Shown here in pieces: positions 21,643 to 62,556 of a stretch of 64,000 nt of DNA (its first letter is position 1; every line of letters begins with the position of its first letter). The notes under the pieces are model-generated. The model searched no databases, was not told the DNA's origin, and worked only from the letters and a program-made list of their open reading frames with translations. A program made the translations under genes and the position numbers. The DNA lies in the NCBI GenBank assembly GCA_002269645.1, contig NIVC01002063.1, positions 62,001 to 126,000 of the forward strand. The letters run 5' to 3'. Source of the DNA: Macrostomum lignano. Taxonomy: Eukaryota.

Positions 21643-24600
21643 TCAAATGCAAAAAGCGCAGAAAGGCACCCGCTTGCTGCCGTCAGCACTCAGCAGAGCC
21701 ACTCTGCAACAGTCAATACAAGCGCACATGGTCTCGTCAAACAGCTCGTCGCAATCTGAAATCAAAAGTTCAGCCCGAGCCGAGCGGCACAGCTGGCAGT
21801 CTCGGTAGGCGAAAGTCAACGAGGAGAAGCCGTGACTGAATCTGGCTAACGGCAGATGCTCGGGATCGGTCGCTGGATGCTTCAAGCTGACGTCAGAGAA
21901 CACTATTATGTGCTCGCAGTTGGCCGCGTGCTGGTACAGGTAAAGCTCTCCTAGTCTCAAGGTTAGCGACGAGATTCTAGTTGACTCCATCGTGTGAGCA
22001 GTTAGTGATTCGCCAAATTCTTGTCTGGCTTTGGAGTTTTCCGACAGCCACTTCAACACCGTGGCGCTGAGTCGGCGGTTAAACGGTAATCGACAATCGT
22101 CATAGAGACCAAGGCCAATGTGAAACATTGACGAGGTGTACACGTCGCGACTGCGGGAACAGCGCTCCGACATGGCCTGTCGAGGGTTGTCGCTGGACAG
22201 CTGGCGGTGGGGTTGCAAGGTGAGGCGATTCTTAGAGTTAAGAGTGGTCTAAAGGCGATTGCTAAAGTCATTTAGAGGCGATTCTTAGGGTGGTCTAAAA
22301 GCGATTGCCAAAGACATTTAGGGGCGATTCTTAAAGTGGTCTAAAAGCGATTGCCAAAGACATTTAGGGGCGATTCTTAAAGTGGTCTAAAAGCGATTGC
22401 CAAAGACATTTAGGGGCGATTCTTAAAGTGGTCTAAAAGCGATTGCCAAAGACATTTAGGGGCGATTCTTAAAGTGGTCTAAAAGCGATTGCCAAAGACA
22501 TTTAGGGGCGATTCTTAAAGTGGTCTAAAAGCGATTGCCAGAGACATTTAGGGGCGATTCTTGAAGTGGTCTAAAAGCGATTGCCAGACATTTAGGGGCG
22601 ATTCTTAAAGTGGTCTAAAAGCGATTGCCAGACATTTAGGGGCGATTCTTAAAGTGGTCTAAAAGCGATTGCCAGAGACATTTAGAGGCGATTCTTAAAG
22701 TGGTCTAAAAGCGATTGCCAAAGACATTTAGGGGCGATTCTTAAAGTGGTCTAAAAGCGATTGCCAGAGACATTTAGGGGCGATTCTTGAAGTGGTCTAA
22801 AAGCGATTGCCAGACATTTAGGGGCGATTCTTAAAGTGGTCTAAAAGCGATTGCCAGACATTTAGGGGCGATTCTTAAAGTGGTCTAAAAGCGATTGCCA
22901 GAGACATTTAGAGGCGATTCTTAAAGTGGTCTAAAAGCGATTGCCAAAGACATTTAGGGGCGATTCTTAAAGTGGTCTAAAAGCGATTGCCAGACATTTA
23001 GGGGCGATTCTTGAAGTGGTCTAAAAGCGATTGCCAGACATTTAGGGGCGATTCTTAAAGTGGTCTAAAAGCGATTGCCAGAGACATTTAGGGGCGATTC
23101 TTAAAGTGGTCTAAAAGCGATTGCCAGACATTTAGGGGCGATTCTTAAAGTGGTCTAAAAGCGATTGCCAGAGACATTTAGGGGCGATTCTTGAAGTGGT
23201 CTAAAAGCGATTGCCAGACATTTAGGGGCGATTCTTAAAGTGGTCTAAAAGCGATTGCCAGACATTTAGGGGCGATTCTTAAAGTGGTCTAAAAGCGATT
23301 GCCAGAGACATTTAGGGGCGATTCTTAAAGTGGTCTAAAAGCGATTGCCAAAGAAATTTAGGGGCGATTCTTAAAGTGGTCTAAAAGCGATTGCCAGAGA
23401 CATTTAGGGGCGATTCTTAAAGTGGTCTAAAAGCGATTGCCAAAGACATTTAGGGGCGATTCTTAAAGTGGTCTAAAAGCGATTGCCAGACATTTAGGGG
23501 CGATTCTTAAAGTGGTCTAAAAGCGATTGCCAGAGACATTTAGGGGCGATTCTTGAAGTGGTCTAAAGGCGATTCCTAAAGCCAGTTTGAGGCGATTCTT
23601 TAAGTGGTCTAAAGGCGATTGCCAAAGACATTTAGGGACGATTCTTAGAGTGGTCTAAAGGCGATTCTTAATGCAATTTAGAGGCGATTCTTAGAGTGGT
23701 CTAAAGGCGATTCCTAATGCAATTTAGAGGCGATTCTTAGAGTGGTCTAAAGGCGATTCCTAATGCAATTTAGAGGCGATTCTTAGAGTGGTCTAAAGGC
23801 GATTCCTAATGCAATTTAGAGGCGATTCTTAGAGTGGTCTAAAGGCGATTCCTAATGCAATTTAGAGGCGATTCTTAGAGTGGTCTAAAGGCGATCTCTA
23901 AGCTATTCAGAGGCGATTCTTAGGGTGGTCTAAAGGCGATTGTTAAAAACATTTAGGGGCGATTCTTAGGGTGGTCTAAAGGCGATTCCTAAAGCCATTC
24001 ATAGGCGATTCTTAGAGTGGTCTAAAGGCGATCGCCAAAGGCATTTAGAGGCGATTCTTAGGGTGATCTAAAGGCGATTGCTAAAAACATTTAGGGGCAA
24101 TTCTTAGGGTATTCAGGAGCGATTTCTAAAAAGTATACTACTAGTAGGTATTTTGCCTTTGGCATAAAAGGAAGCAATAAGGCCAGTGTTTTCCGATTCG
24201 AGATTAAATAATCCGTGCAGTTGTCCAGCTAAATTCTAAATAGCGCATTCCTGCTAAATTTACTCATGGGTTAATAATTTCATAGCTAAGTTTTTGCAGT
24301 GCCCTATCTTGACCCTTTGTCAGTAGATGACTGCTGTACAATAAGGTTGAATACATATAATGTAGCTGATGTAGAAGGCTTCGTACGGCTGTTAGGTCCA
24401 AGGACTGGGGGAGGGGGGTCTCCACACACAACCTCAATTACCCCAGCTAATGCTGGCACCCATTTTACAGCTGGGTGAACTGAAGCAATGCAGAGTTAAG
24501 TGTCTTGCTCAAGGACACTAATTGTTCCGAGTGGGATCGGGAATCGAACCCCCGACCTTTAAGTCGTGAGTTCGACGCTCTGACCACTAGGCTACAAACC

Positions 24601-27600
24601 CTCTGCTTCCCAGCATGGCCAATAGATACAGTCCCAGCACTGTCCCTTAAAATGGGTAATGGCTTCAAGTTTTACATCTAAATTACACTATGCTAGATGC
24701 TCCGAGCCCCCCGATAACCAAAGGCTAAAAGGCCGGATTTTATTAAACGAAGACTGAACAAAGAAAATTGCATGCAAGCTGCAGCCGGTAGAACTTGAAT
24801 TCGAATGAAAAACGTTCTTTATTAATATTCGTTTAGACCGTTAGACTTCTTGTATTGAAGTTATCATAAGTTTGTTGTCGTGTCTGGAGTCTCACTGCAG
24901 CACAAACTTCACCCAGTCGTCGCTGTTCTCGATCTGCTGCTCAACCTGGGCGTCACTGAACTGCAGCAGTCGGCACTGGCCGAGGGCTTTGTTGTACAGC
25001 ACGCTCCTGGTGTTCGGGACTTTGCCCAGTGCAGCTATGAGGCATTCAAGCACTTTGGTGACTTTATGCAGGTCGGTGTAACAGTACTGAGTGTTGTAGA
25101 GCGAAACTAGAGAAATCCGCGTCAGCGAGGTCGGTCACTCCGAGCCACAGTTGATTACCGCTGTCCATACTCGGCATGCTGCTGAGCAGTTTCAGAGTTT
25201 CGTACGAGTTGATGAGCTCACCTCCGATCGCTGCGCACTGCCGGTTGACCTCGCACCAGGTGAAATCTTTAGAATTGTTCACGAAGATGCACTTGCCGGC
25301 TTCGGTGTAAAACGGCGAAGGGCACGCGGCCTGCTGTTGGGATGAGCCAACTTGCATAAGCAGTAGCACTGCCATGCTAACAGTCAGAGTCAGCTCAGCA
25401 ATCATCATGGTGACTGGGGTGGCAATGCAGGTGCGCATTGGATATGCAGCATTCAAGCAAGCATTAAATAGTATTTTTCTTCTGCTCATTTCAATAATCG
25501 AGATCTTTTGTTTTGCGTCGGGCCAACAAAAAAACTGCCATATCCCAATGCCACTGCCTGGCATAACAGACAGAATTTCATTAGCTGAAAATCAACGAAG
25601 CTCTTTTCATCTTTGCCGACAGTGAATTATATCTACCGGTGGCTATTTATGTTTACATTTAGAATGAAAGAACCCTTGGCTTTTACTGATCAGTCAAGAC
25701 TGAGGAGTCATTTAGGGCTCCAATTGTTCGGCTTTCCTTTTTGACTATGCTGAGATGAAAAGAAAAAAAAACTCGTAATGGAATGCAGTTTTCCCTGAAA
25801 ATATGTTTTCGAAAGAAGACATTGTTTCTAAGACAAAAAATTTTGGTTGCCATGGCAACTAAAATTCCATTTTTATTACGTTTTCTCCCAAAATTGAATC
25901 GTAAAAATAAGTATTCATTATATCTGGACGTTAAATTATTAGTTATTAAGCTGATTCTCAATGTGGTTTAGGGGCGATTCTCAAGGTGGTTTAGGGGCGA
26001 TTCTCAAGGTGGTTTAGGGGCGATTCTCAAGGTGGTTTAGGGGCGATTCTCAAGGTGGTTTAGGGGCGATTCTCAAGGTGGTTTAGGGGCGATTCTCAAG
26101 GTGGTTTAGGGGCGATTCTCAAGGTGGTTTAGGGGCGATTCTCAAAGTAGTTTAGGGGCGATTCTCACGGTGGTTTAGGGGCGATTCTCAAGGTGGTTTA
26201 GGGGCGATTCTCAAGGTGGTTTGAAGGTGATTCTCAGGATGGTTGAAAGGCGATTCTCAGGATGGTTTGAAGGCGATTCTCAGGATGGTTTGGGGGCGAT
26301 TCTCAAGGTGGTTTAGGGGCGATTCTCAAGGTGGTTTGAAGGCGATTCTCAGGATCGTTGAAGGCGATTCTCAGGATGGTTTGGGGGCGATTCTCAAAGT
26401 GGTTTAGGGGCGATTCTCAGGATGGTTTGAAACGATTCTCAAGGTGGTTTGAAGGCGATTCTCAGGATGGTTTGAAGGCGATTCTCAGGATGGTTTGAAG
26501 GCGATTCTCAGGATGGTTTGAAGGCGATTCTCAGGATAGTTTGGGGGCGATTCTCAAGGTGGTTTAGGGGCGACTCTCAAGGTGGTTTGAAACGATTCTC
26601 AAGGTGGTTTAGGGGCGATTCTCAAGGTGGTTTAGGGGCGATTCTCAAGGTGGTATAGGGGCGATTCTCAAGGTGGTTTAGGGGCGATTCTCAAGGTGGT
26701 TTGAAGGTGATTCTCAGGATGGTTGAAAGGCGATTCTCAGGATGGGTTAAAGGCGATTCTCAGGATGGTTTGGGGGCGATTCTCAAGGTGGTTTAGGGGC
26801 GACTCTCAAGGTGGTTTGGGGGCGATTCTCAAGGTGGTTTGAAGGCGATTCTCAGGATCGTTGAAGGCGATTCTCAGGATGGTTTGGGGGCGATTCTCAA
26901 AGTGGTTTAGGGGCGATTCTCAGGATGGTTTGAAGGCGATTCTCAGGATGGTTTGAAGGTGATTCTCAGGATGGTTGAAAGGCGATTCTCAGGATGGTTT
27001 GAAGGCGATTATCAGGATGGTTTGAAGGCGATTATCAGGATGGTTTGAAGGCGATTCTCAGGATAGTTTGGGGGCGATTCTCAAGGTGGTTTAGGGGCGA
27101 CTCTCAAGGTGGTTTGAAACGATTCTCAAGGTGGTTTAGGGGCGATTCTCAAGGTGGTTTAGGGGCGATTCTCAAGGTGGTTTAGGGGCGATTCTCAAGG
27201 TGGTTTAGGGGCGATTCTCAAAGTAGTTTAGGGGCGATTCTCACGGTGGTTTAGGGGCGATTCTCAAGGTGGTTTAGGGGCGATTCTCAAGGTGGTTTGA
27301 AGGTGATTCTCAGGATGGTTGAAAGGCGATTCTCAGGATGGTTTGAAGGCGATTCTCAGGATGGTTTGGGGGCGATTCTCAAGGTGGTTTAGGGGCGATT
27401 CTCAAGGTGGTTTGAAGGCGAGTCTCAGGATCGTTGAAGGCGATTCTCAGGATGGTTTGGGGGCGATTCTCAAAGTGGTTTAGGGGCGATTCTCAGGATG
27501 GTTTGAAGGCGATTCTCAAAGTGGTTTAGGGGCGATTCTCTAGGTGGTTTGAAACGATTCTCAAGGTGGTTTGAAGGCGATTCTCAGGATGGTTTGAAGG

Positions 27601-30600
27601 CGATTATCAGGATGGTTTGAAGGCGATTCTCAGGATGGTTTGAAGGCGATTCTCAGGATAGTTTGGGGGCGATTCTCAAGGTGGTTTAGGGGCGACTCTC
27701 AAGGTGGTTTGAAACGATTCTCAAGGTGGTTTAGGGGCGATTCTCAAGGTGGTTTAGGGGCGATTCTCAAGGTGGTTTAGGGGCGATTCTCAAGGTGGTT
27801 TAGGGGCGATTCTCAAGGTGGTTTGAAGGTGATTCTCAGGATGGTTGAAAGGCGATTCTCAGGATGGGTTAAAGGCGATTCTCAGAATGGTTTTTAGGCG
27901 ATTCTCAGGATGGTTTTAAGGCGATTCTCAGGATGGTTTGGGGGCGATTCTCAAGGTGGTTTAGGGGCGATTCTCAGGATGGTTTGAAGGTGATTCTCAG
28001 GATGGTTTGAAGGCGATTATCAGGATGGTTTGAAGGTGATTCTCAGGATGGTTTGAAGGTGATTCTCAGGATGGTTGAAAGGCGATTCTCAGGATGGGTT
28101 AAAGGCGATTCTCAGAATGGTTTTTAGGCGATTCTCAGGATGGTTTGAAGGCGATTCTCAGGATGGTTTGAAGGCGATTCTCAGGATGGTTTGAAGGCGA
28201 TTCTCAGGATAGTTTGGGGGCGATTCTCAAGGTGGTTTAGGGGCGACTCTCAAGGTGGTTTGAAACGATTCTCAAGGTGGTTTAGGGGCGATTCTCAAGG
28301 TGGTTTAGGGGCGATTCTCAAGGTGGTTTAGGGGCGATTCTCAAGGTGGTTTAGGGGCGATTCTCAAGGTGGTTTGAAGGTGATTCTCAGGATGGTTGAA
28401 AGGCGATTCTCAGGATGGGTTAAAGGCGATTCTCAGGATGGTTTGAAGGCGATTATCAGGATGGTTTGAAGGCGATTCTCAGGATGGTTTTAAGGCGATT
28501 CTCAGGATGGGTTGAAGGCGATTCTCAGGATGGTTTGAAGGCGATTCTCAGGATGGTTTTAAGGCGATTCTCAGGATGGGTTGAAGGCGATTCTCAGGAT
28601 GGGTTGAAGGCGATTCTCAGGATGGTTTTAAGGCGATTCTCAGGATGGGTTGAAGGCGATTCTCAGGATGGTTTGAAGGCGATTATCAGGATGGTTTGAA
28701 GGCGATTATCAGGATGGTTTGAAGGCGATTATCAGGATGGCTGGCTTAAAGGAAGACAAGAAGCAACATGACTGCAAGAAACCCACCAGTTCAGACACGT
28801 CGCCAACAATGACATCGTCCTGGCGGCAGCAGATCTGATCCTTCAGATCAGCCAGAGTGTGCCGGGCTCGCAGCAGAATGAGCTGGCTGCAGCGCAGGTA
28901 GTTAGCAAAGGACCTGGCCACACCGCGCCCTCCAACATCTGGCAGGGGAACGTACACCCGAACAGTCACTAGAAGGTCGTCCATCTCGCTAGGCGACAGA
29001 GGCTTAGCGAACTGCTTGACTGGCAGACTGGCTCTGTCGTGAGCGCACAGCAGTTCTATAGCGGGAAGCCGATCCCTGTTGTTGAGGAATCCTGACGCTG
29101 CTTTGGACAGCGGCTCCGAGTTTTGGCGCAACCTTCTCAGCGTTGCCAATGTTGAAATTTGATGGCGCGGATTGCGCAGAGAATTTGGGCTGAGGAAGCT
29201 GCACAGACCTGTGGGATTCGGGATGGCGCTGTGGGATTAAATATGAGGGATTTTGAAAGGCTTCAGATACAATGGGATTTGGGAAGAAATAGGATTTTAC
29301 AATAGGATTTGAAAAAGATGGATTTTTACAATGGGATTAGGGAAGAAATGGGATTTTACAATGGGATTTTACAATGGGATTTGTGAAGAAATGGGATTTT
29401 ACAATGGGATTTGGGAAGAAATGGGATTGTACAATGGAATTTGGGAAGAAATGGGATTTTACAATGGGATTTGGGAAGAAATGGGATTTTACAATGGGAT
29501 TTGGGAAGAAATGGGATTTTACAATGGGATTTGGGAAGAAATGGGATTTTACAATGGGATTTGGGAGAAATGGGATTGTACAATGGAATTTGGGAAGAAA
29601 TGGGATTTTACAATGGGATTTGGGAAGAAATGGGATTGTACAATGGAATTTGGGAAGAAATGGGATTTTACAATGCGATTTGGGAAGAAATGGGATTTTA
29701 CAATGGAATTTGGGAAGAAATGGGATTTTACAATGGGATTTGGGAAGAAATGGGACTCTACAATGGGATTTGGGAAGAAAATGGGATTTGGGAAGAAATG
29801 GGATTTTACAATAGGATTTGGGAAGAAATGGGATTTTATAATGGAATTTGGAAAGAAATGGGATTTTACAATGGAATTTGGGAAGAAATGGGATTTGGGA
29901 AGAAATGGGACTCTACAATGGGATTTGGGAAGAAATGGGACTTTACAATGGGATTTGGGAAGAAATGGGACTCTAAAATGGGATTTGGGAAGAAATGGGA
30001 CTTTACAATACAATGGAATTTGGGAAGAAATGGGATTTTACAATAGGATTTGGGAAGAAATGGGACTTTATAATGGGATTTGAGAAACGGGATTCGACAT
30101 GGAAAGGGATTTTATTCTACAATGGGATTGAGGATGAGATGGGATTTTTACGGTGGGACGAGAAATGGGAAGAAATTATGGCTCTTCACCCAATAATACA
30201 TGTACATGCAATATTTGCGAGCACCCTGGAGCAAAGCCTTTGGCGACCTCGTCACACAACCAGCTAGCGGTGAGGCAGTTCTGCCCATTCCACAGACTCC
30301 TTAGCACATACAAGCGCCCCAATACTGTACGCAGGCACGAGCTCACACCGGGTGTAGTTTAATTTGGGAAGTAGAGACTTTAGGCTGAGCAGAGACGGAA
30401 ACAGTGATGAAGCATAGATCCAGTCTCACCCGTCAGGGCGGCATGGTTACTAGCGTCATCAGCCTCGGCAGCGGCATCGAGCAGGTCCCGCCTGACGGCA
30501 TCCGGGTTGCACTCGGAAGCCAGGGCAGTCACGTCAACGTCGGGAAATTCTCGAGTCAGCTCCGAGAGCAGCTGAGATTGCACAGCCGCTTCAGCTGTCG

Positions 30601-30751
30601 CCGTTGCAGTCTCCGTCGCCGTAGACGAAGTGGTTGAATCTGGAAACACCTCAGAGGCGGCATTCTGCATAGCCAATAGTAGTTGACGAAGGTTCAACCA
30701 ATCGGAATGAGGATGAATTGAGGTTTCGTCCTGAGGCTTAGTGTCAGACAT
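21643..30751 (-). CDS. SNAPC3: snRNA-activating protein complex subunit 3 (SNAP50/PBP49)
   Basis: Exons 30751-30430, 29208-28787 and 22200-21643 join in frame (phases 1, 0) to about 433 aa. Exon 2 has LLVTVRVY...SQLILLRARHTLADLKDQICCRQD. Exon 3 has YDDCR..LSATVLKW...LRLGELYLYQHAANCEHIIVFSDVSL...CQLC...CIDC, matching the SNAP50 C-terminal zinc-binding domain (human [24 protein letters not shown]). Confidence 0.9.
22222..24110. repeat. Higher-order minisatellite, ~44-46 bp dimer of two GCGATT-containing ~23-mers
   Basis: GCGATTCTTAAAGTGGTCTAAAA alternates with GCGATTGCCAAAGACATTTAGGG. Confidence 0.95.
24375..24602 (-). mobile_element. tRNA-derived CORE(MIR)-like SINE, family B, second copy
   Basis: The reverse complement aligns end to end with 15608-15850. 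Confidence 0.8.
24892..25408 (-). pseudogene. Intronless secreted C-type lectin domain plus PAN/Apple-like domain gene, internally deleted and frameshifted; nested in SNAPC3 intron 2
   Basis: From ATG 25408: a signal-peptide-like MMIAELTLTVSMAVLLLMQVGSS, then CPSPFYTEAGKCIFV...TWCEVNRQCAAIGGEL...LWLGVTDL (first half of a CTLD). After a +1 shift near 25110-25130 the frame reads YNTQYCYTDLHKVTKVLECLIA...SVLYNKALGQCRLL...DWVKFVLQ-stop (PAN-like). The second half of the CTLD is missing. Confidence 0.65.
25962..28740. repeat. Minisatellite, 23-bp unit (GGCGATTCTCAAGGTGGTTTAGG and variants) with block duplications
   Basis: Directly visible; related to the 22222-24110 array. Confidence 0.95.
29270..30175. 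repeat. Minisatellite, 30-bp unit (TGGGATTTGGGAAGAAATGGGATTTTACAA)
   Basis: Directly visible. Confidence 0.93.
30220..30360 (-). mobile_element. Headless fragment of the SINE family A central domain (SNAPC3 intron 1)
   Basis: CTGCCCATTCC...CAAGCGCCCCAATACTGTACGCAGGCAC is the reverse complement of the same core. Confidence 0.6.
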
Positions 30752-30879
30752 TGTTGCGTTGAGATTGATACAGTTCTTCTTTGCATAAAATATTGTAAAT
30801 GCAAAATAAATATTGAACATATTTAGGAATTACAAAGACAAATTACTGTTGCGCATTCTTTGGGACTTCTTAGAATGGT

Positions 30880-31706
30880 TTGGTTCGTATGTACATTTGG
30901 GTTGGGTTGGGTATTATATGTACATAGGAGTAGAGATAGAATTGGCCTTAAGTGTATACATTGGGGTAGGGATAGGGTTGGCCTCGAGTGTACATCGGGG
31001 TAGGGATGGGGTTGGCCTCGACTGTACATTAGGTAGCGATGGATGAGTGTACATCGGGGTAGGGATAGGGCTTGCCTCGAGTGTACATTCGGGTAGCGAT
31101 GGGGTGGATGTACATCGGGGTAGGGATGGGGTTGGCCACAACTGTACATTAGGTAGCGATGGGTGAGTGTACATCGGGGTGAGGATAGGGCTTGCCTCGA
31201 GTGTACATTCAGGTAGCGATGGGGTGGGTGTACATTGGGGTAGGGATAGGGCTTGCCTCGAGTGTACATTCAGGTAGCGATGGGGTGGGTGTACATTGGG
31301 GTAGGGATAGGGCTTGCCTCGAGTGTACATTCAGGTAGCGATGGGTGAGTGTCCATCGAAGTAGGGATGAGGTTGGCCACAACTGTACATTAGGTAGCGA
31401 TGGGTAAGTGTACATCGGGGTAGGGATGGGGTTGGCCACAACTGTACATTAGGTAGCGATGGATGAGTGTACATCGGGGTAAGGATGGGGTTGGCCTCGA
31501 CTGTACATTAGGTAGCGATGGATGAGTGTACATCGGGGTAAGGATGGGGTTGGCCTCGACTGTACATTAGGTAGCGATGGATGAGTGTACATCGGGGTAA
31601 GGATGGGGTTGGCTTCGACTGTTCATTAGGTAGCGATGGATGAGTGTATATTGGGGTAGGGATAGGGCTTGCCTCGAGTGTACATTCGGGTAGCGATGGG
31701 GTGGGT
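30880..31706. repeat. Composite minisatellite (GTGTACATTGGGGTAGGGATAGG.. / GTACATTAGGTAGCGATGG) in the SNAPC4-SNAPC3 spacer
   Basis: Directly visible. Confidence 0.9.
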
Positions 31707-32411
31707 CTTGGGTCTTTTGGGCCTGTTTTATGACAAATAATTCAATCAGTAATAAAATTTACGATTGCTATATTATATAAAAAATTATGACTGTGACTGC
31801 ATCTCAGATTAATTTGTGCTTGTGATCAAACACACTGAATACAGATGGAGATTGTTAAAATGCCTTTATTATATGGGAGAAACAATGCAAGGTAAAAAAT
31901 AAATTTTTTTGAGAGGAAAACAGCGACGCCACGATAGAAAACAAATTACAACACGAACAAATATTATTAGCGCTGGCATAAACTACGCATTTAATAATAT
32001 TACGCTAATAGTAAATAGAAAATTAACTTGCAATTTAATGAATTTGGACAGAAACTGTTAGTCTGCTATGCCTTATCTTAAAATTTACACTGTTGGAAGT
32101 CGCTAGGAAAAACTTGAAACCTCCTTACTAGAATGTACTTTTAGAAAACCCAATAGAAAACACTTGCAGCTTTTATCTAATATGTACTTTTCTAATAATT
32201 GGTAGATCGCAACCTTCTTTTAATTAAAATTTTCCATTTGAAGAAACCCAGAACATACTTGCAAGCACATTTAAATGAGAATGTACTTTTTAAGGTAATA
32301 AACAAGATTAAATATAAGTGTCTTGAGGCATGAAATACTTTGCAATGTCCCTGCCCCCAGTATACAAAGAATTGTTTTCAATATCCATTAAATTCACTTT
32401 AACAGTCAGAG

Positions 32412-33958
32412 TTAGGAGTCAATAGCAGCTTCATCTTTTTGATCAGCATCATGTCCAGCGGCAGCAGCCTCAGACTGTGGCAGCAGGCAAGACTGAGGCC
32501 GATAGCCCATAGCAACCAGTTGCAACAGTTCGCTAGGCACAGTAATCCATTCACCGTTGCCAAGAGCAACGTTAACTAATGAATCTAATCGATAATCTCC
32601 AACAACGCATTCGGTTTTGAATTGTTGCAGGTCTTTAGCTGTTAATCGTTTGCGGTTCGAATGATTTGGGCTCAGCTCCTTCTGTTGCTGCTGCAGTTGA
32701 TTCTTCTTTTCTCTTTGAAGTCGCCGTTCGCTCATTTTGCCGACGCAACGCGCGTGAGACGAGTTGGCCGGCACCAAGTGTTTGGGTTTGGGCAGCAGGA
32801 AATGCCGCGGATCAAGTAGGGAGCGCATGCTGCTGACCGCGACGCCGCGGGAGGCGTTGCCGCCGCCGCCGCGGTTCAACTCGGACCGGTCGGCTCGGGC
32901 AGTCAAATGCGACGCAGGCCGATGTTCAACCAGCTGTTGTTGTCGAGTTTCGCTAGCCGCGACATCGTCGTCAAACGATTCTAATTGCAGCTCCTCTTGG
33001 CTGAGAAAGTCCGGAGCTCGAGCCCGACAATCGGCGAAGCTCATGCCGGACAGCACAGCTGGCCAAGCGAATAGCCGGTGAAACTTGTCGCCTAATTCTT
33101 GCCAGCCCCTGTCAACATCGTTGTCGTCGTCGTCACCTGCGTCCATCGACTGTCGGAGCAGCCGCTCGCGACTGCTCAACAGGCGCAGAAACGCCGACGC
33201 TGTTGACATATTTAACGGCATCGGCGGCGCGTCGGTGTCGGCCAGGTAGACGCGGAAGAATTCCGACACTCGCTGGGCGCAGTTGCGTCGCAGTTTCAGC
33301 AGGTCGCCGCCCGACGAATCGCCGAGAATGCGACAGACAGGCGGCAGGCGGTAGCGACGAACTGGCAGGTCGAGTAGGCGAGTTTTTGTTGCCAGGCGGC
33401 TGGCTATTCGATTGGCCAGAGCTCGCTTGGCGACAGCGTCAGGCGTGTCGTCCTTCGGAGCATCGATCAATTCTGCGGCGGTGACGTCACCGTCTTCTTC
33501 GACATCGTCGTCGTCGTCTACCAGCATGGTGACGTCATCCGTCTCTTTTTCAACAAACGCGCTATCAGAAACGTCATCGTCGGCGTCCAAATCGACGTTT
33601 GGCTCGACGGCGGGGTCAGGTCGGTGTCGCTTCTTCGGTCGAGTCGATTCGTCGCCCTCGAAAGTCGCTGAGGCCGTTGCTGCCGTTAAGCGCCGTTTTT
33701 TAGCGGCCTGCGCCGATTTTAAAGACGCTGGCAAGGTCGGCGGCGGCTCCTTTGGCGCTGCTGTGGACGTCGAGGCCACATCGGGATGGGCGGCGTTGGT
33801 TGCGGCCCCGGACGACTGCTTGGATGGCGATGAGGCGAGCGACTGCAAAGGAAGCAGATTATGATAGGGTGCACGTTTTTTCCACTGATTGCTTACCTAA
33901 GGCAGACAAAGCAGTGCGGGCCTGACACTAAGACAGACACTGAGACAGACAGACACTA

Positions 33959-34011
<53 letters not shown>

Positions 34012-34014
34012 CTA

Positions 34015-34063
<49 letters not shown>

Positions 34064-37000
34064 CTAAGACAGACACTAAGACAGACAGACACACAGACAG
34101 ACAGACAGACACAGACAGACAGACAGAGAGACAGACAGAGAGACAGACAGACAGACAGCTAATGTAACAGAAGAGCCTCACCAGAATGGACTGAACAATC
34201 TGTGGCACCATAGCCCTGTACTGGCGCACGGTTTTGCACCGATCGAAGCGAGTTTTCAGCTGCGGCGCCTCCATAGCCGTCTGCAAAGTGAGCCACAGTC
34301 GGTCCTCAGACTCCGGCAGCAGTAGTTCGCGCAAGCGCAGTCGAGTTGCCTCGTCGAAATTTTGCCGATTTACCGACTGCGTCAAAGCGGAAACAATCGG
34401 CCGCCACAGGGCCGCCTTCGCAGTGGCATCTCGTCGGAGTTTTTCAAGTTTGAAACGACTGTTGGTGACCTTGCCGGGCAGAGGGCGCGGCAGGAGAAAG
34501 CCTTCGTCAGCGTCCATTAGAAGCTGCGGGTGTTGTTCAGAACAGTCAGTAAAGAATGTGCAGTGTTTTTCTTCCTAGGTGTACACTATTTAGGGTTGTA
34601 GTGGTAAGGTACTGCCTGATAACTCTCTGCCCCAGATGTGCATTATCGGGGGTTGTGGGGGAAAGGGGTCTGCCTGATAACTCTGTGCCCCAGATGTGCA
34701 TTATCGGGGGTTGTGGGGGAAAGGGGTCTGCCTGATAACTCTCTGCCCAGATGTGCATTATCGGGGGTTGTGGGGGAAAGGGGTCTGGCTGATAACTCTC
34801 TGCCCCAGATGTGCATTATCGGGGGTTGTGGGGGAAAGGGGTCTGACTGATAACTCTCTGCCCCAGATGTGCATTATCGGGGGTTGTGGGGGAAAGGGGT
34901 CTGGCTGATAACTCTCTGCCCAGATGTGCATTATCGGGGGTTGTGGGGGAAAGGGGTCTGGCTGATAACTCTCTGCCCCAGATGTGCATTATCGGGGGTT
35001 GTGGGGGAAAGGGGTCTGGCTGATAACTCTCTGCCCCAGATGTGCATTATCGGGGGTTGTGGGGGAAAGGGGTCTGGCTGATAACTCTCTGCCCCAGATG
35101 TGCATTATCGGGGGTTGTGGGGGAAAGGGGTCTGGCTGATAACTCTCTGCCCCAGATTTGCAGGAGGATAGGAGACGGCTGGCTGAAAATTCCCAGCCCC
35201 CCTCCAAATAACAGACAAACCTGCGACAGCTCCTCCTTTGACGCAGCAGTTGGCTCCTGTTTTAATGTAGCTGCCACCTGCTGCTGCTGTTGGTCCCCTC
35301 CACTTCCGCCAGTTGAGTTGCAGTCGAGAAAGCCGCCACTAGCCAGCAGTTTAGCCATCAACGGCGTCCTTAGCAACAATCGCCGAGTGTCATCGCCAAC
35401 TCCAACAGAGGCTTTGACGCGTTCCCACACTAGGCTAGACAGCACCAGCTGGCGCCAACGCCAGGCTAAACCGGGCGCGCTTCTACCGGGAAACATTGAC
35501 AATAAATCAGTCCAGCAGATATTATAAACTTGAAGATCGATAAATTTTTGTACCGCCAATCGTATCGATTTCTGACTATGACCCTGGGCGATGTTCCGCT
35601 TGACGAGGTCTTGCAGACTGGTTGGCTGCGGCACCAGCAGGAAGAGGCGGCGGTCGTCTGCGTAGCTCCAAGGCGGCTGGTCTCGGGTGAGCAAGTGGTC
35701 CACGGCTTTGCGGCAGGCCAGGTCGGTGCTGCGCAGTGTCAGAAGGGGGGGGGGTAATGAGAGGCTTGGCGTGCGGGTCAGGGGAGAGGGAGATGGGGAA
35801 GAGCGAGATGGGGAGGAATAGGGAGAGGGAGAAGGAGAGGGGTGTTGATGGGGAGAGGGAGAGTAGGGAGAGAGACAAGGGAGAGGGAGACAAGAAAGAT
35901 GAAGAGAAGGGAGAGGGATAGAAGGAGGGATAAAGGAGGAGAGATAGAAGGAGAGATAGAAGGAGGGATAAAGGAGGGATAGGAGGAGGGATAAAGGAGG
36001 AGGGATAGGAGGAGGGATAAAGGAGGAGGGATAGGAGGGATAAAGGAGGAGGGATATGAGGGATAAAGGAGGGATAGGAGGAGGGATAAAGGAGGAGGGA
36101 TAGGAGGGATAGAAGGAGGGATATGAGGGATAAAGGAGGGATAGGAGGAGGGATAAAGGAGGAGGGATATGAGGGATAAAGGAGGGATAGGAGGAGGGAT
36201 AAAGGAGGAGGGATAGGAGGGATAGAAGGAGGGATAAAGGAGGAGAGATAGAAGGAGGGATAAAGGAGGGATAGGAGGAGGGATAAAGGAGGAGGGATAG
36301 GAGGGATAAAGGAGGAGGGATATGAGGGATAAAGGAGGGATAGGAGGAGGGATAAAGGAGGAGGGATAGGAGGGATAAAGGAGGAGGGATATGAGGGATA
36401 AAGGAGGGATAGGAGGAGGGATAAAGGAGGAGGGATAGGAGGGATAAAGGAGGAGGGATATGAGGGATAAAGGAGGGATAGGAGGAGGGATAAAGGAGGA
36501 GGGATAGGAGGGATAAAGGAGGAGGGATAGGAGGGATAAAGGAGGAGGGATATGAGGGATAAAGGAGGAGAGATAAAGGAGGAGGGATTGGAAGAGGAGA
36601 AATAGATGGAGGAGGAGGGAGACAAGGGAGAGGGAGAGGAGAGGGAGACGGAGGGAGATGGGGGAGGGAAGAGTGTAAATCGGGGATATGGTACAAAGAG
36701 AGAAGTGACAGGTGATGGAGTACAATTGCGGGCACATTAACAAACGATAAGTTATAAACAGAGCCTCAGAATAGAAAATGCAGTCAAACGATCTGGCGCA
36801 ATTAAAGAGTAAAAATTCAATTTAAGAAACACCCATAACCATGCCCAGCCGACTCACCGAGTGCCGACGTATTGAGCAATTCGAAAAAACCGAAACGGCC
36901 CGAACTGGTCAACTGCCATCAGCAGTCGCAGCCGATCGCTAGCAGGCCAATCATAACCCAAATCTGGAGCCAATGAGCGCCACAGCTCTGATGCAGCTCG

Positions 37001-40000
37001 ATGCGATTTCGGGTACAGCTTGAGTTGCATCGACACCTGACGCCAGTCAATTCTGCCGGTGGCCTGGATGAATGGAAGCAGAATCTTTCTACACTGAGTG
37101 ACCTAAGTCTGTTATTTGGAGGGTTCTATTGCGGGGGCGCCAGAGGCGCCAGCACCAGAATCGCCAGCACCAGAGGCGCCAGCACCAGAGGCGCCAGCAC
37201 CAGAGGCGCCAGCACCAGAGGCGCCAGCACCAGAGGCGCCAGCACCAGAGGCGCCAGCACCAGAGGCGCCAGCACCAGAGGCGCCAGCACCAGAGGCGCC
37301 AGCACCAGAGGCGCCAGCACCAGAGGCGCCAGCACCAGAGGCGCCAGCACCAGAGGCGCCAGCACCAGAGGCGCCAGCACCAGAGGCGCCAGCACCAGAG
37401 GCGCCAGCACCAGAGGCGCCAGCACCAGAGGCGCCAGCACCAGAGGCGCCAGCACCAGAGGCGCCAGCACCAGAGGCGCCAGCACCATGGACTTCCCATC
37501 TTGTCCCGCACTGCACACAAAACCGCACCTGAGTAGCAATGGACTCGTTAACAGCGGACACCACAGACGCCGCGGCCACCGTCTCACTGCTGGCTTCGGC
37601 CGGCGCTGGCAACTGCTGCTCCTGACTGCGCGACCTGCGATGCCGGGACAGCCAGCGTTGGGCGCAGGCCAGCGGAGGTCGCACCTTGCCCTGGGATGAG
37701 CTCAGTGCCGCTGACACGGGGCCCCAGTTGCGTTCGCCAAGCTCATCAACCAGAGCGATTAGACGAGCGTCCTCTGCAGGTTTCCATGCCGACCTGGTTG
37801 GTGGGTGGATTGAGTTATTAGCAGCGATTTTTGACGGATTTTAAGGATTTTTAATTGGACATTGGTGACTTAGGACTAGGGATTAGCAATCAGGGACTAC
37901 AGATTAGCGATTAGGGACAATGGATTAGTGACTAGGGACAATGGATTAGCGACTAAGGACAATTTATTAGCGATTAGGAACTAGGGATTAGTGGTTAGGG
38001 ACAAGGGATTAGTGATTAGTGACTAGAGATTAGTGATAAGGGTGTAGTGATTAGTGATTAGGCAGTCAGTCAAATGAATCGCTCACGAGTCAATGCCAGG
38101 CCTGAGCACATTGGCGTACGCCAGTCTCAAACTCCGAGCGGTGAGCTGCACAATGCCGGTGCTTGGTCTCTGCCCTTCTAAGTCCGACAATACCGCGTCG
38201 AAATTGATGAGGCCAGCACCGCCATTTGGTCCTTCGGCAGCCAGTCTGCCCAGCAACTGATCCGTGCTAGAATTTTGCAATCGTTTAATCTCCGAGTCCA
38301 GCTCGGCCGCGGCTATTCGAGTGGACTTAATGGCCGACGATAAAGCGGCCGAGCTGCGCATCCGTTCGGCCAGTCCGGCCTGACGGGACAGCAGAGGCCG
38401 GAGTCGAGTCTCCCGATAAAATTCTGCCACTAATTGCAGAAGTTTTTTCAGACATCCCTGCCTGTTTGACAGACTGGAAACTTTGCCGGTGTACAGCGCC
38501 GAGCTGCCAGCAAAGGTGGCCAGATTGGCCAGACACAGCTCCGCCCGGTTGCGCTTTTGAAGGCCGTCAGCGTTTGGCGGGCAAACAATTCTGGGTGTGC
38601 GGTGGCGAGCGGGGAGGCCAAGTGTACATTGGGAAAGGGGTAAGATTTTTTAAAGCTAGTGTACATTGGGGGTAGAGATTTATTGAAGCTAGTGTACATT
38701 CAGAGTAGAGATTTTTTGAAGCTAGTGTACATTCAGGGTAGAGATTTTTTGAAGCTAGTGTACATTGGGGGTAAGAGATTTTTTAAGCTAGTGTACATTG
38801 GGGGTAGAGATCTTTAAAGCTAGTGTACGTTGGGGGTAGAGATTTTTCAGCTAACGTACATTGAGGGTAGAGATTGTTTGAAGCTAGTGTACATTGAGGG
38901 TAGAGATTGTTTGAAGCTAGTGTACATTGGGGGTAGAGATTTTTAAAGCTAGTGCACATAGGAGGCGTAGAGATTTTTTAAAGCTAGTATACATTGGGGG
39001 TGATTTTTAAAAGCTAGTGCACATTGGAGGGGTAGAGATTTTTTAAAGCTAGTGTACATTGGGGGTAGAGATTTTTTAAGGCTAGTGTACACTGATAGTG
39101 TACATTAGGGATAGAGATTCTTTAAGGTTCACCAACCTTGAGTTTCCTGAATCGTAGACGGAGAAAAACGGCGACCTAATCAGACCCCGTCTGGCCAGTC
39201 GCAGCTGCGGCAGCCGGCCGCCACCCAGCAGCATCGAAGCTGAGGCCGCCCCGGCAGCAGCTTCGTGATCGTCGCTAGCGGCTACACCCGGTGCTCCAGC
39301 ACCATAGCCCAGCGACAGCATCAACTGACAGCTGGTGCCAACGTCCCCGAGTTTCTCGGCGTCGCCTTCCAACGCCGACTTGCTTGCGGCCACTTCGCTG
39401 ATGCGAGATTCTACTCGGCGAAGGCACTCGGCAACGAGCTCCTAGGAGGTTGAAAATATGGAAGATATGGAGGATACTATCGCGGGATATTAATTCCCCC
39501 TACAATGGGATAAAAGTTCCCTCTACAATGGGATAGTGATTCCCCCTACAGTGGGATAATAATTCCCCTACGATGGGATAATGATTCACTCTACCATGGG
39601 ATAGTGATTTCCCCTACTATCAGATAAGAATTCACCCCTCTAATGGGATAATGAAATGATCCCCCTATAATAGTATAATGATTCCCCTCTACAATGGGAC
39701 AATGATCCACCACAATGGAATAATGATTCCCCCTACAATGAAATGATTCTCTACAATTGGAGAATGATTCCCCTTACAATGGGATGATGATTCCCCCTAA
39801 AATTGGATAATGATTCCCCTACAATGGGATAATAATTGCTCCAGAATGGAATAATAATTTCCCCCTATAATGGGATAATGACCCACCTACAAAGGGATGA
39901 TGATTCCCCCTATAATGGGATGACAATTCCCCCTATAATGGGATGACAATTCCCCCTATAATGGGATAATGATTCCTCCTACAATGAGATAATAATTATG

Positions 40001-40309
40001 CTACACTGGGGCAATGATTCTCCCACAAAGAGCTAATGTCTTCGCACCATCTAACACTAATTGCTGTCATACACATACCTGCAGAGTCTGATTGATAACC
40101 AGCACAGTCTCAGCATCGCAGGGAATTTCCCCATCCTCAGCATTGCGCAAAGCAATCAACAGGCTGGAGGCTTTGAAGTCAACCTCATCTTCTGGATTGT
40201 CAAAATATTCCTCTGGATTTTGATTGCCACTGTCTATGGCATTATTGCCTTCTATTGGTGCAGCCTTCTCACACTTGGCTATGACCAAGGGATTTTCAGG
40301 GTTGATGTC
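32412..40309 (-). CDS. SNAPC4: snRNA-activating protein complex subunit 4 (SNAP190, multi-Myb repeat); first exon not located
   Basis: Exons 40309-40079, 39441-39137, 38590-38087, 37793-37529, 37102-36858, 35728-35221, 34574-34182 and 33842-32412 all join in phase (3882 nt). IPCDAETVLVINQTLQ/ELVAE resembles human LPEDPETCLQLNMVYQEVIQE; RSPFF and VCPPNAD resemble MKPYF and GPPANED. Myb repeats: PGIDSSAWKPAEDARLIALVDELGERNWGPVSAAL; APDLGYDWPASDRLRLLMAVDQFGPFRFFRIAQYVGTRTDLACR; WSYADDRRL...WTDLLSMFPGRSAPGLAWRW. Confidence 0.85.
33925..34158. repeat. (GACA)n microsatellite
   Basis: Directly visible. Confidence 0.95.
34610..35158. repeat. Minisatellite, ~58-bp G-rich unit
   Basis: GCCCCAGATGTGCATTATCGGGGGTTGTGGGGGAAAGGGGTCTGGCTGATAACTCTCT, about 9-10 copies. 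Confidence 0.93.
35760..36670. repeat. Polypurine array (GGAGGAGGGATA/GGGATAAA)
   Basis: Directly visible. Confidence 0.9.
37135..37487. repeat. Near-perfect 15-bp array (CAGAGGCGCCAGCAC), intronic
   Basis: Lies between the donor at 37528 and the acceptor at 37103 of SNAPC4. Confidence 0.95.
37850..38065. repeat. Degenerate GATTAG-rich tandem repeat
   Basis: GATTAGTGACTAGGGA-like units. Confidence 0.75.
38620..39085. repeat. Minisatellite, ~32-34 bp unit (GCTAGTGTACATTGGGGGTAGAGATTTTTTAAA)
   Basis: Directly visible. Confidence 0.9.
39490..40020. repeat. Degenerate 23-bp minisatellite (GGGATAATGATTCCCCCTACAAT)
   Basis: Directly visible. Confidence 0.85.
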
Positions 40310-41866
40310 CTGCAGTTATTTTTGATACATATTGGATCATTTAGTTTCTAATTAGGGCATACAGAGACATTTTTCTGCCTATAAAACTACATTGACAATG
40401 TTTTGCTACACCAGAATAGAGCAATGCAGATACATAACATTTAAGAACATAAGCTAACTTTTTGACGCAAACCTTCTTAAACAAGAAACAAGTCACCAGA
40501 CCCCCAGAGTGTCAACAATTCTACCAAAAGAACAGATTTTTTCTATAAGTGCTAGTGTATTTACAATGTATCCCTCTGTGCCAATTAGCAGTGTCTTAGT
40601 ATAGCCTCAAGATACCCAACTGCAAAATTTTTTCTAATATCACTAAATAAGCATCAATGATTGGAAAACCTAAATTATTGGAAATATTTAGTTAGTCTCT
40701 TAAGCATTCATTCATCAGATGGCAGAATTATGGACATCCAAAAAAGATTTTATCATTAAACTCATATATACATAATAGTTTTATAACTATATAATAGAAG
40801 CTACTATATAATACTTAAATGCTAATATATAGAGATAGGACAAAAAGAAACAAAAAGTCTATTAGTCAAAAGCTAAGCAATAAATATTAGAAAATTTAAA
40901 TAAATTGATATAAGGATAAAAATATTCATTTAAATTAAATATACAATATATCTAGTCTATATATTTCTATAAAACAAGCCTATTAATACCATTTCTATTA
41001 GTATCAATATAATTATCATACAAATAGGAAGTCCAAAAAAAAATTTTATTAGGAACTCAAAATTTAATATAAATATTATTGTCAAGTAAAGTCCCAACTT
41101 ATTAGACCTAATATTATAAGTGAGTGATCATTCAGTTTTCATAGTTAATGATGATAGCATAAAAAACATGTTGCCAATTATGAGATAGATAGGTCACTTT
41201 AAAAATTATAAATATAAGGTTTAAACTTTTAAATGTTGGCTTGTAAAACATTTTTTTTAGAACCAAATAAAATTCAAATCATAGGACATAGCTACAACCT
41301 GCAAGCTCAGATAAAAAGAAGAGAATGAATAAGCCTAAAGAGAAAGGGAAAATAAGTATTAAGAGATAATAAAAGAAAAAAATATGTAGAAAATAGGGGT
41401 TAGACAATATAATTTTTTTAGATTTATGCTTTTAAGGTAATTGAGATTTAAGATTAAGCCAAATTAGTATCTAGTAGGCCTATTCTGTCTATTTACACTA
41501 TTCTATCTATCAATGCTAATATTAGGCCTATTATTTGTTAAGTATATATACCTATCTATAATGATAATAATAAAAAGAAAATCAACTTATATAATATTGA
41601 GCTTGTTGCTATGTTAATAACTTGGTATATATCAAATATAAATAAAATAATATTGCAGTCACTAATAGTCATATAGTCATAACCATAAATCTTGACTTTT
41701 TAAGATCTTAAAACTGAGATCAATATTGAAAAAGTGCTTAAATCTTGACAATCAAGGTCAATATCTTGTTTGAACTTTAGTAAGAAAAGAGACATGGTCA
41801 TAAGAGGATTTATAAATTATAATAAAAGAATAAGATCTAGGTTTTCTGCTGGCACTAAGATGCAAA

Positions 41867-46998: not shown

Positions 46999-47419
46999 CT
47001 GGGAGTAGACTTATTTTCCCTATTTGAGCTGGGCTGACTTTTAATTCCCTAAATCTATGGTGGCAATAGAAAACTAATCTACAGTAAGCTTACAGATAAC
47101 TTATTTTGGCAAGACTTTCTTGCTTCGTTTGGAATATAATATAAAATATAAGCTGAATTTTGCCTACTGCAGAAGCTGCTACTGCGTTAGTCAGTTGGAC
47201 TCAACTTAAATAAAGTCTTTGCCAATTAGTCAGTGCGTTCAATGGGAATCGCTTGCCTAGGGGAAAAACTTAGTATGATATTATATTATGCTTTTGTCTA
47301 TGGCCGAATGGTGCGAATGTCTCACACATCTTGATATTTTAAATTAATTTGCATTTCAAAAGTAAAAGTACATGAGAATATTCTAGAACTATATTACAGT
47401 ATATATTTTGTAACTAATG

Positions 47420-55580: not shown

Positions 55581-55732
55581 ATTGAGTTTAGCGCAACAAT
55601 ACTAGCAGGATAAATCTAACAATTATTGAATACTACAGATTCATAGTTTATTATCCTGATTCTCCTCCGCATTTCCTAGAAAGCACTGCCCGCAACGCCG
55701 TACTGATCGTACAAGCATCTCAGTCGACGTAC

Positions 55733-62475: not shown

Positions 62476-62556
62476 GTTGGCGCTGTCTCTGTTGTCCTGT
62501 TTGCACCCTTGGTTCTCATGCTCTTGGCGCCACTTGATTCTGAGTACTGGCGCTGC

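What the first reader, a model, noticed from the sequence alone, without database searches (positions are those of the whole stretch)
21643..40309. SNAPC4 (SNAP190) and SNAPC3 (SNAP50) sit head-to-tail on the same strand: a candidate operon for the snRNA/SL-RNA transcription factor
Seen: two spliceable genes on the minus strand. The SNAPC4 stop is at 32412 and the SNAPC3 ATG at 30751 (1.66 kb apart, about half of it one minisatellite). Known: SNAP190 and SNAP50 are obligate core subunits of SNAPc, which binds the PSE of snRNA genes and drives SL RNA transcription in trans-splicing organisms. In human the two genes are far apart (9q34 and 9p22). Inference: this is a functional cluster or dicistronic operon that keeps the subunits stoichiometric. 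If the downstream cistron needs SL trans-splicing, SNAPc output (SL RNA) would control production of its own subunit, forming a positive feedback loop.
Basis: partly seen in the sequence, partly recalled or inferred. Interest (0 to 1): 0.85.

Follow-up and report, generated by a model that had tools for sequence, protein, structure and literature searches.

The report
Adjacent SNAPC4 and SNAPC3 genes in Macrostomum
In the flatworm Macrostomum lignano the genes for two core subunits of the snRNA/spliced-leader transcription factor SNAPc sit next to each other on one strand; they fit the spacing and layout this species' published operon rule asks for, but nothing here shows they are transcribed together, and the pairing is absent from the other flatworms checked.

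Summary
The window is Macrostomum lignano DV1, contig NIVC01002063.1: 29,139 bases match it exactly. On the minus strand, an 8-exon Myb gene (40309..32412) lies directly upstream of a 3-exon SNAPC3 gene (ATG 30751, stop 21643). SNAPC3 identity is solid. The SNAPC4 assignment is good but rests on weaker scores.

Stop and ATG are 1660 nt apart, and 782 nt of that is one minisatellite. All three M. lignano copies of the locus, on three contigs, keep the pair, so it is not an assembly join.

SNAPC4 exon 1 starts right after a CTGCAG acceptor and has no genomic ATG. The spliced leader's terminal ATG is in frame. So the best evidence for spliced-leader dependence concerns SNAPC4, not SNAPC3.

The pair meets the spacing and layout conditions of the published M. 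lignano operon rule. Whether SNAPC3 is trans-spliced or co-transcribed could not be tested, because no reads were available. I put the operon reading at about 0.5.

The adjacency is absent in Echinococcus, Taenia, Cichlidogyrus, Lineus and Gordionus; Paragonimus shows no gene in about 10 kb upstream. In cestodes SNAPC3 is followed closely by MOZART1 instead.

About 15% of this species' genes are predicted to be in operons, so this is a new, functionally neat member of a known kind.

The parts
32412..40309 (-). SNAPC4 (SNAP190) orthologue. Eight exons: 40309-40079, 39441-39137, 38461-38087, 37793-37529, 37102-36858, 35728-35221, 34523-34182 (alternative acceptor at 34574), 33842-32412. The model is 1233 aa plus an SL-derived Met.
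   Evidence: Hand-built model with GT..AG introns, in frame. Its range equals the NCBI CDS range of the 1263-aa Myb gene. Junctions 6/7 and 7/8 are the same as in UniRef models P0181 and P0182. Pfam Myb_DNA-binding E=4.8e-12. The best PDB sequence hit is human SNAPC4, 7xur_A.
40310..40318 (-). SNAPC4 trans-splice acceptor, TAA CTG CAG|GAC. An in-frame stop lies two codons upstream of the acceptor, and the acceptor matches the species' SL acceptor motif [T/C]TNCAG.
   Evidence: Sequence read; motif from PMC8629364. The annotated CDS starts exactly at 40309 in copy g1 and 3 nt downstream in g2. Exon 1 has 77 codons without an ATG, and the first genomic Met is at about codon 125. The SL ends in ...TTGCATG, so ATG|GAC ATC is in frame.
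35440..38215 (-). Myb domain of SNAPC4 (half repeat Rh, then Ra, Rb, Rc, Rd), spread over exons 3-6.
   Evidence: Pfam Myb hits. HMMER alignments to human SNAPC4 are in register for Rh-end/Ra (query 287-357 to human 293-359) and for Rb-end/Rc/Rd-start (to human 410-482).
30782..32411 (-). Intercistronic region, from the SNAPC4 stop to the annotated SNAPC3 5' end: 1630 nt, of which 848 nt are non-repeat.
   Evidence: It is 98-99% identical among the three copies outside the minisatellite.
31865..31870 (-). AATAAA, the only canonical poly(A) signal after the SNAPC4 stop (545 nt downstream). ATTAAA variants are at 32224, 32039 and 31995.
   Evidence: Pattern scan. Actual use as a poly(A) signal is inferred, not shown.
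30919..31700 (-). Minisatellite (34/59-nt units) filling 47% of the gap. It is much shorter in copy g2.
   Evidence: TRF; three-copy alignment.
30775..30783 (-). Annotated 5' ends of SNAPC3 and candidate trans-splice acceptors, GCAAAG|AAG|AAC. The SL ATG would be in frame with the ORF at either AG.
   Evidence: The 5'-partial NCBI CDSs start at 30781 (g1, g3) and at the equivalent of 30775 (g2). Sequence read. No SL reads were available.
21643..30781 (-). SNAPC3 (SNAP50) orthologue. Exons 30781-30430 (ATG at 30751), 29208-28787, 22200-21643.
   Evidence: Exact reconstruction of P0180. Pfam PF12251 E=3.7e-30, against a cutoff of 23.8 bits. The only PDB hit is human SNAPC3, E=9.8e-17. 477 homologues at E<=1e-3, of which the clusters that were looked up and carry a source name include SNAPC3-named members.

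Best explanation
Two real genes, the M. lignano orthologues of SNAPC4 and SNAPC3, lie in tandem on one strand and most likely form a two-gene transcription unit resolved by the spliced leader (SL). Shown or nearly shown: SNAPC4 pre-mRNA is trans-spliced at CTGCAG|GAC (40310/40309), and the SL's 3'-terminal AUG supplies its start codon. Inferred: transcription runs past the SNAPC4 poly(A) signal (AATAAA at 31870) and through the minisatellite. Also inferred: SNAPC3 is released by SL addition at AAAG|AAG|AAC (about 30778 or 30775), which gives it a cap and a short 5' UTR, and it is then translated from its own ATG at 30751 or from the in-frame SL AUG. The arrangement is kept in all three copies in M. 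lignano but is not ancestral to flatworms.
For: Identity: SNAPC3; SNAPC4. Same adjacency and orientation on three contigs, with CDS gaps of 1630, 1121 and 1571 nt and no annotated gene between. SNAPC4 evidence: its annotated CDS starts exactly at a YTNCAG acceptor; an in-frame stop lies two codons upstream; there is no genomic ATG before the conserved N-terminal motif; and the SL ATG is in frame. Distance: 848 nt of non-repeat DNA between the stop and the SNAPC3 5' end, or about 290 nt if AATAAA at 31870 is used. Both are under the 1 kb repeat-adjusted threshold of PMC8629364. The flanking gaps are much larger: 4.6 kb upstream, and downstream no sizeable minus-strand ORF for about 1.5 kb, with the nearest recognisable gene (filament-like, plus strand) at least 4 kb away. 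The SNAPC3 5' ends in all three copies lie within 30 nt of the ATG and within 3 nt of AG dinucleotides. Two older gene models (P0181, P0182) fuse the two ORFs at the same junction. PMC12582326 treats such chimeric models as a sign of polycistronic pre-mRNA.
Against: No SL-containing or bridging reads could be examined. The SNAPC3 5' end lacks the YTNCAG motif, which is present at 44% of known SL sites. The g1 and g3 CDS start at 30781 is not directly preceded by AG. An AT-rich, TATA-like stretch (TATTTAT) about 28 nt upstream of 30782 would also fit an independent promoter. The raw gap of about 1.1-1.6 kb is long compared with the roughly 100 nt mode. The fused models need a non-canonical GT..TG junction, so they may be artefacts. 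The pairing is not conserved outside Macrostomum.
Confidence: 0.5

Rival explanations
1. The two genes are simply neighbours with separate promoters. SNAPC4 ends at one of its poly(A) signals, and SNAPC3 starts from its own promoter in the 137 nt (or more) between the minisatellite and position 30781. The adjacency arose by a lineage-specific rearrangement, and it persists in three copies only because those copies are recent duplicates.
For: The three copies are 97-99% identical even in introns and intergenic DNA, so retention says little about selection. There is a TATA-like AT-rich sequence about 28 nt upstream of the annotated start and no YTNCAG motif. SNAPC3 has its own ATG. The adjacency is absent in cestodes, a monogenean, a nemertean and a nematomorph, and no neighbour is seen in Paragonimus.
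Against: The repeat-adjusted distance falls in the operon mode for this species. The 5' ends are sharp and lie next to AG dinucleotides in all copies. Chimeric models exist.
Confidence: 0.4
2. SNAPC3 is SL trans-spliced but from its own promoter and outron (monocistronic trans-splicing), so it is not an operon despite the proximity.
For: About 60% of trans-spliced M. lignano genes are not in predicted operons. The minisatellite or the unique DNA on either side of it could hold a promoter.
Against: There is no positive evidence for a promoter there. The published rule would class the pair as an operon.
Confidence: 0.1

Closest known systems
[quoted passage not shown] 2017, PMC5730564)
   Same: Same species, same strand, immediately adjacent, and a repeat-rich intercistronic region that drops below 1 kb once repeats are subtracted. 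Two-gene operons are 75% of those predicted.
   Different: SL trans-splicing of the downstream gene, which is the defining criterion, was not verified here. The raw distance is far above the roughly 100 nt mode. The two products belong to the same protein complex.
Flatworm SL 3'-terminal AUG used as the initiator methionine (Cheng et al. 2006, J Biol Chem 281:733, as cited in PMC12582326 and PMC9851317)
   Same: SNAPC4 exon 1 has no genomic ATG, the SL ATG is in frame, and the acceptor is canonical. In S. mansoni more than 40 cDNAs need the SL AUG in this way.
   Different: Here it is inferred from genome sequence and annotation only. It was not shown by cDNA or by translation assays.
C. elegans and Schistosoma polycistrons (C. 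elegans operons; S. mansoni cytochrome b-c1 subunit 7-enolase; candidate operons of parasitic flatworms, PMC12582326)
   Same: The downstream cistron is capped by SL addition. Chimeric gene models are used as a sign of an operon.
   Different: Intercistronic distances there are typically 100-300 nt. M. lignano has a single SL with no SL2-type specialisation.
SNAPc as the SL RNA gene transcription factor (trypanosomatids, e.g. PMC5829719; C. elegans SNPC-4 at SL RNA genes, from my own knowledge)
   Same: These systems provide the logic for a loop running SNAPc to SL RNA to SNAPc mRNA maturation.
   Different: Nothing is known about SL RNA gene promoters or SNAPc binding in flatworms. No SL RNA or snRNA gene lies in this window.
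SNAPC3-MOZART1 tandem pair in Neodermata (seen here)
   Same: SNAPC3 sits in a tight same-strand pair: 213-216 nt to MOZART1 in Echinococcus and Taenia, and a chimeric gene model in Paragonimus.
   Different: The partner is a different gene, and SNAPC3 is the upstream member. No MOZART1 is present in this window.

Membership tests
SNAPC3 / SNAP50 (Pfam PF12251) | Match to the family HMM above the curated cutoff | tested here: met
   The last exon alone scores 105.5 bits against a cutoff of 23.8, E=3.7e-30.
SNAPC3 / SNAP50 (Pfam PF12251) | Best match among solved structures is SNAPC3, and the conserved Cys/His and acidic positions are present | tested here: met
   The only PDB hit is human SNAPC3, E=9.8e-17, covering residues 226-441. 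In the alignment of 128 homologues, invariant D293, H349 and H355 and near-invariant C353, C393 and C396 are all present in the M. lignano protein.
SNAPC4 / SNAP190 | Four and a half Myb repeats (Rh, Ra-Rd) in the middle of a protein of more than 1000 aa | tested here: met
   The model is 1234 aa. Pfam Myb E=4.8e-12 with two significant stretches. HMMER alignments to human SNAPC4 are in register for Rh/Ra and for Rb-end/Rc/Rd-start. Assigning all five units also relies on reading the repeats by eye against the fragments printed by HMMER.
SNAPC4 / SNAP190 | Closer to SNAPC4 than to other Myb proteins | tested here: inconclusive
   Human SNAPC4 is the top PDB hit, but the margin is small: 4.7e-5 against 2.1e-3 for c-Myb with the N-terminal 620 aa of the model, and 3.3e-5 against 5.6e-5 with Rb-Rd. 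The database search found no homologues. The AlphaFold model was too poor to use (pLDDT 44).
SNAPC4 / SNAP190 | N-terminal helix upstream of the Myb domain (in human, the region that binds SNAPC1 and SNAPC5; that role is from my own knowledge) | tested here: met
   Model residues 58-85 align with human residues 92-118. Smith-Waterman score 51 against 24.6 +/- 4.1 for shuffles; 0 of 2000 shuffles reach it. Binding itself was not tested.
M. lignano SL-resolved operon (PMC8629364 criteria) | Adjacent, same orientation, no opposite-strand gene between | tested here: met
   NCBI gene calls on three contigs.
M. lignano SL-resolved operon (PMC8629364 criteria) | Repeat-subtracted intergenic distance below 1000 bp | tested here: met
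   1630 nt minus 782 nt of tandem repeat leaves 848 nt from the stop codon; less once the 3' UTR is removed.
M. lignano SL-resolved operon (PMC8629364 criteria) | Downstream gene is SL trans-spliced | not testable with these tools
   No RNA reads were available. Indirect evidence only: the 5'-partial CDS starts flank AG dinucleotides. Supplement searches for the gene found nothing.
M. lignano SL-resolved operon (PMC8629364 criteria) | A single primary transcript spans both genes | not testable with these tools
   The only hints are the fused gene models P0181 and P0182, and their junction is non-canonical.
mRNAs initiated at the SL AUG (slORF) | Acceptor at the 5' end of the ORF, SL AUG in frame, and no usable genomic AUG | tested here: met
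   This applies to SNAPC4: CTGCAG|GAC, a TAA two codons upstream, and 124 codons without Met. SL-joined cDNA was not examined.

The most novel reading that the evidence does not exclude
SNAPc and the spliced leader form a closed loop in this worm. SNAPc transcribes the SL RNA gene. The SL then supplies the cap and the only start codon for SNAPC4, and it releases SNAPC3 from the same polycistron. Output of the two largest core subunits would therefore be matched to each other and gated by SL supply.
Probability: 0.15. Interest if true: 0.6.

Novelty: new member of a known kind. Interest (0 to 1): 0.4.

Why it matters
If the pair is co-transcribed, it would be a clear case of an animal operon holding two subunits of one complex. 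The complex in question is the one expected to make the SL RNA that operon processing depends on. M. lignano can be made transgenic and RNA-seq, SL-read and poly(A)-end data already exist, so the idea can be tested cheaply. If the genes are transcribed independently, this is an ordinary lineage-specific neighbour pair. The lasting results would then be the corrected gene models and the SL-AUG start of SNAPC4.

Tried and rejected
- Database search with the SNAPC4 Myb region found nothing.
- A profile search with 128 SNAPC3 homologues returned only 3 proteins, because of the candidate cap. Other flatworm orthologues had to be taken from the representative search and the cluster look-ups.
- AlphaFold on the Myb region without an alignment gave pLDDT 44, so no fold search was run.
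- The N-terminal 306 aa alone gave no PDB hit.
- Supplement searches for Mlig020528 or SNAPC in four papers, and for SNAPC or MOZART in PMC12582326, found nothing.
- No SL sequence and no Rfam family is present in the window.
- No MOZART1 is present in the window.
- An assembly join is rejected, because three contigs show the same arrangement.
- An upstream cis exon supplying the SNAPC4 ATG was considered. The annotation has none, no coding-looking ORF lies in 40310-44895, and that 4.6 kb is AT-rich.
- A three-gene operon with the upstream kinase is unlikely, given that 4.6 kb gap.
- Conservation among the three copies is uninformative, because they are 97-99% identical everywhere.
Full report
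**Where the window comes from.** A search with a draft SNAPC3 protein returned Macrostomum lignano proteins at near identity. Window 11643-40781, read on the minus strand, is 100% identical over 29,139 bases to NIVC01002063.1:73643-102781 of assembly GCA_002269645.1 (Mlig_3_7, line DV1). The window is full of minisatellites, with 93 TRF rows, and has no tRNA, Rfam family or SL RNA sequence.

**SNAPC3.**
- Three exons (30781-30430, 29208-28787, 22200-21643) with GT..AG introns reproduce NCBI protein PAA61181.1 (Mlig020528g1) residue for residue.
- The ATG is at 30751 and the stop at 21645-21643.
- The last exon alone hits Pfam PF12251 at E=3.7e-30.
- The only PDB sequence match is human SNAPC3, at 9.8e-17.
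- An exhaustive HMMER search found 477 homologues at E<=1e-3. The clusters that were looked up and carry a source name include SNAPC3-named members.
- The invariant Asp, His and Cys positions of a 128-sequence alignment are all present.
- Orthology is secure.

**SNAPC4 gene model.** I built an eight-exon model by hand, from 40309 to 32412, giving 1233 aa. Its limits equal the NCBI CDS range of a 1263-aa Myb gene. Two of its junctions are the same as in independent UniRef models.

**SNAPC4 identity.**
- Pfam gives Myb_DNA-binding at 4.8e-12.
- Human SNAPC4 is the top PDB match, at 4.7e-5 for the N-terminal 620 aa and 3.3e-5 for Rb-Rd. c-Myb is close behind, at 2.1e-3 and 5.6e-5.
- The alignments are in register for the half repeat plus Ra, and for the end of Rb through Rc into Rd.
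- A motif upstream of the Myb domain (model residues 58-85) aligns with human residues 92-118 at a Smith-Waterman score of 51. Shuffles give 24.6 +/- 4.1, and 0 of 2000 reach the observed score.
- I accept the gene as SNAPC4, with the caveat that score separation from other Myb proteins is small. A database search and a structure prediction added nothing.

**Geometry of the pair.** The SNAPC4 stop and the SNAPC3 ATG are 1660 nt apart. The minisatellite at 30919-31700 accounts for 782 nt of this. All three copies of the locus in the assembly (g1, g2, g3, on three contigs) have the Myb gene directly upstream of SNAPC3 on the same strand. The CDS gaps are 1630, 1121 and 1571 nt, and no gene is annotated between them. 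The differences in gap length come from minisatellite copy number. This excludes an assembly join. The copies are 97-99% identical throughout, so their agreement is weak evidence for selection.

**Spliced-leader dependence of SNAPC4.** The M. lignano SL ends in ...TTGCATG, and SL acceptors are enriched for [T/C]TNCAG (PMC8629364). SNAPC4 exon 1 begins right after TAA CTG CAG|GAC. The annotated CDS of g1 starts at exactly that base. There is an in-frame stop two codons upstream and no ATG for 124 codons, a stretch that includes the conserved N-terminal motif. The SL ATG is in frame. Use of the flatworm SL AUG as an initiator is established in Schistosoma (Cheng et al. 2006, as summarised in PMC9851317 and PMC12582326). 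So the sequence argues strongly that SNAPC4 is trans-spliced and starts at the SL AUG. Upstream of the acceptor lies 4.6 kb of AT-rich DNA with no coding-looking ORF, reaching back to the stop of a protein kinase gene.

**Is SNAPC3 trans-spliced, and is the pair an operon?** The published rule for M. lignano has four parts: immediately adjacent, same strand, downstream gene SL-spliced, and repeat-subtracted distance under 1 kb with a mode near 100 nt. By this rule 15% of genes are in operons.
- Distance: 848 nt of non-repeat DNA separate the stop from the annotated SNAPC3 5' end. This falls to about 290 nt if the only AATAAA (31870) is the SNAPC4 poly(A) signal. The spacing and layout criteria are therefore met.
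- 5' ends: the 5'-partial CDSs begin at 30781 (g1, g3) and at the equivalent of 30775 (g2). They flank GCAAAG|AAG|AAC, and the SL ATG would be in frame at either AG. The SNAPC4 starts show the same jitter of about 3 nt around a clear acceptor.
- Points against: there is no YTNCAG motif, 30781 does not follow an AG, and an AT-rich TATA-like stretch about 28 nt upstream would also suit a promoter.
- Fused models: two gene models from the older ML2 annotation (P0181, P0182) join the ORFs at the same point...VALGN|AKKNC.... PMC12582326 treats chimeric models as footprints of polycistronic pre-mRNA. However, the junction here would be a non-canonical GT..TG intron, so I give it little weight.
- No reads could be reached.
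- My estimates: about 0.5 for a true operon, about 0.4 for independent promoters, and about 0.1 for monocistronic trans-splicing.

**Synteny.**
- Within 10 kb of SNAPC3 there is no Myb gene, annotated or detectable by tblastn, in Echinococcus multilocularis, Taenia solium, Cichlidogyrus, Paragonimus, Lineus or Gordionus.
- In Paragonimus the roughly 10 kb upstream simply holds no called gene, which is a weak negative given how large trematode genes are.
- In both cestodes a 74-aa MOZART1 gene follows SNAPC3 by 213-216 nt on the same strand. The Paragonimus SNAPC3 model carries a MOZART1 domain as well.
- SNAPC3 therefore seems to sit in tight same-strand pairs with different partners in different flatworm lineages.
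- The SNAPC4-SNAPC3 pairing looks specific to Macrostomum, as far as it has been sampled.

**Assessment.** The operon is plausible under this species' own criteria but unproven. The proposed feedback is better grounded for SNAPC4 (start codon from the SL) than for SNAPC3. Operons and SL-AUG starts are both well known in flatworms, and 30-39% of M. lignano genes are trans-spliced. This is therefore a new member of a known kind. What sets it apart is that its two products are partners in the complex expected to make the SL RNA.

Noticed in passing
L004 10001-12745; L009 10001-12792; L002 9947-25782: In Echinococcus multilocularis and Taenia solium a 74-aa MOZART1 gene lies 213-216 nt downstream of SNAPC3 on the same strand. 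The Paragonimus SNAPC3 gene model carries both the SNAPC3 and the MOZART1 Pfam domains. This is a candidate conserved SNAPC3-MZT1 operon in parasitic flatworms. It is not listed in the supplements of PMC12582326 that are held as text.
   Followed up: partly
window 32553 and 30784 (junction of fused models P0181 and P0182): Two UniRef/ML2 gene models, from different copies of the locus, fuse the SNAPC4 C-terminal part to SNAPC3 at the same junction (VALGN|AKKNC). In this assembly that would be a GT..TG 'intron', whose position is ambiguous by a single shared G. The origin is unexplained: transcript evidence, an artefact, or a sequence difference in ML2.
   Followed up: partly
window 37140-37487: A 15-nt minisatellite (CCAGAGGCGCCAGCA, 23 copies, 98% identical) lies in SNAPC4 intron 4. 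It is open in all three frames and in frame with exon 4, where it would read (GAGAS)n. Copy g3 has about three times as many units. I treated it as intronic.
   Followed up: partly
window 25067-25591, minus strand: A 175-codon open frame inside SNAPC3 intron 2 has a C-type-lectin-like look by eye (CPSPF...WCEVNRQCAAIGGEL...LWLGVTD). It has no Pfam hit and is not annotated in the NCBI record. It could be a relic exon or an unannotated nested gene.
   Followed up: partly
window 44896-47089, minus strand: A protein kinase gene (Pfam Pkinase; CK1/TTBK-like by eye) lies upstream of SNAPC4 on the same strand. It is separated from the SNAPC4 acceptor by 4.6 kb of 29-32% GC DNA without coding-looking ORFs.
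   Followed up: partly
window 55592-62556, plus strand: A PPIP5K/VIP1-type gene: PPIP5K2_N at E=2e-36, RimK-like ATP-grasp, and histidine phosphatase branch 2.
   Followed up: no
window 13500-17007 (plus strand) and 3846-11629 (plus strand): An intermediate-filament/lamin-like coiled-coil gene converges on the SNAPC3 3' end (weak Pfam Filament hit). Further along is a Cys-loop ligand-gated channel-like gene, judged by eye from its transmembrane segments.
   Followed up: no
whole window: Introns and intergenic DNA are dominated by long, highly regular minisatellites. Examples are 22238-24106, 25973-28740, 29360-30086, 34612-35162 and 49012-51498. Their copy numbers differ between the three copies of the locus.
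   Followed up: no
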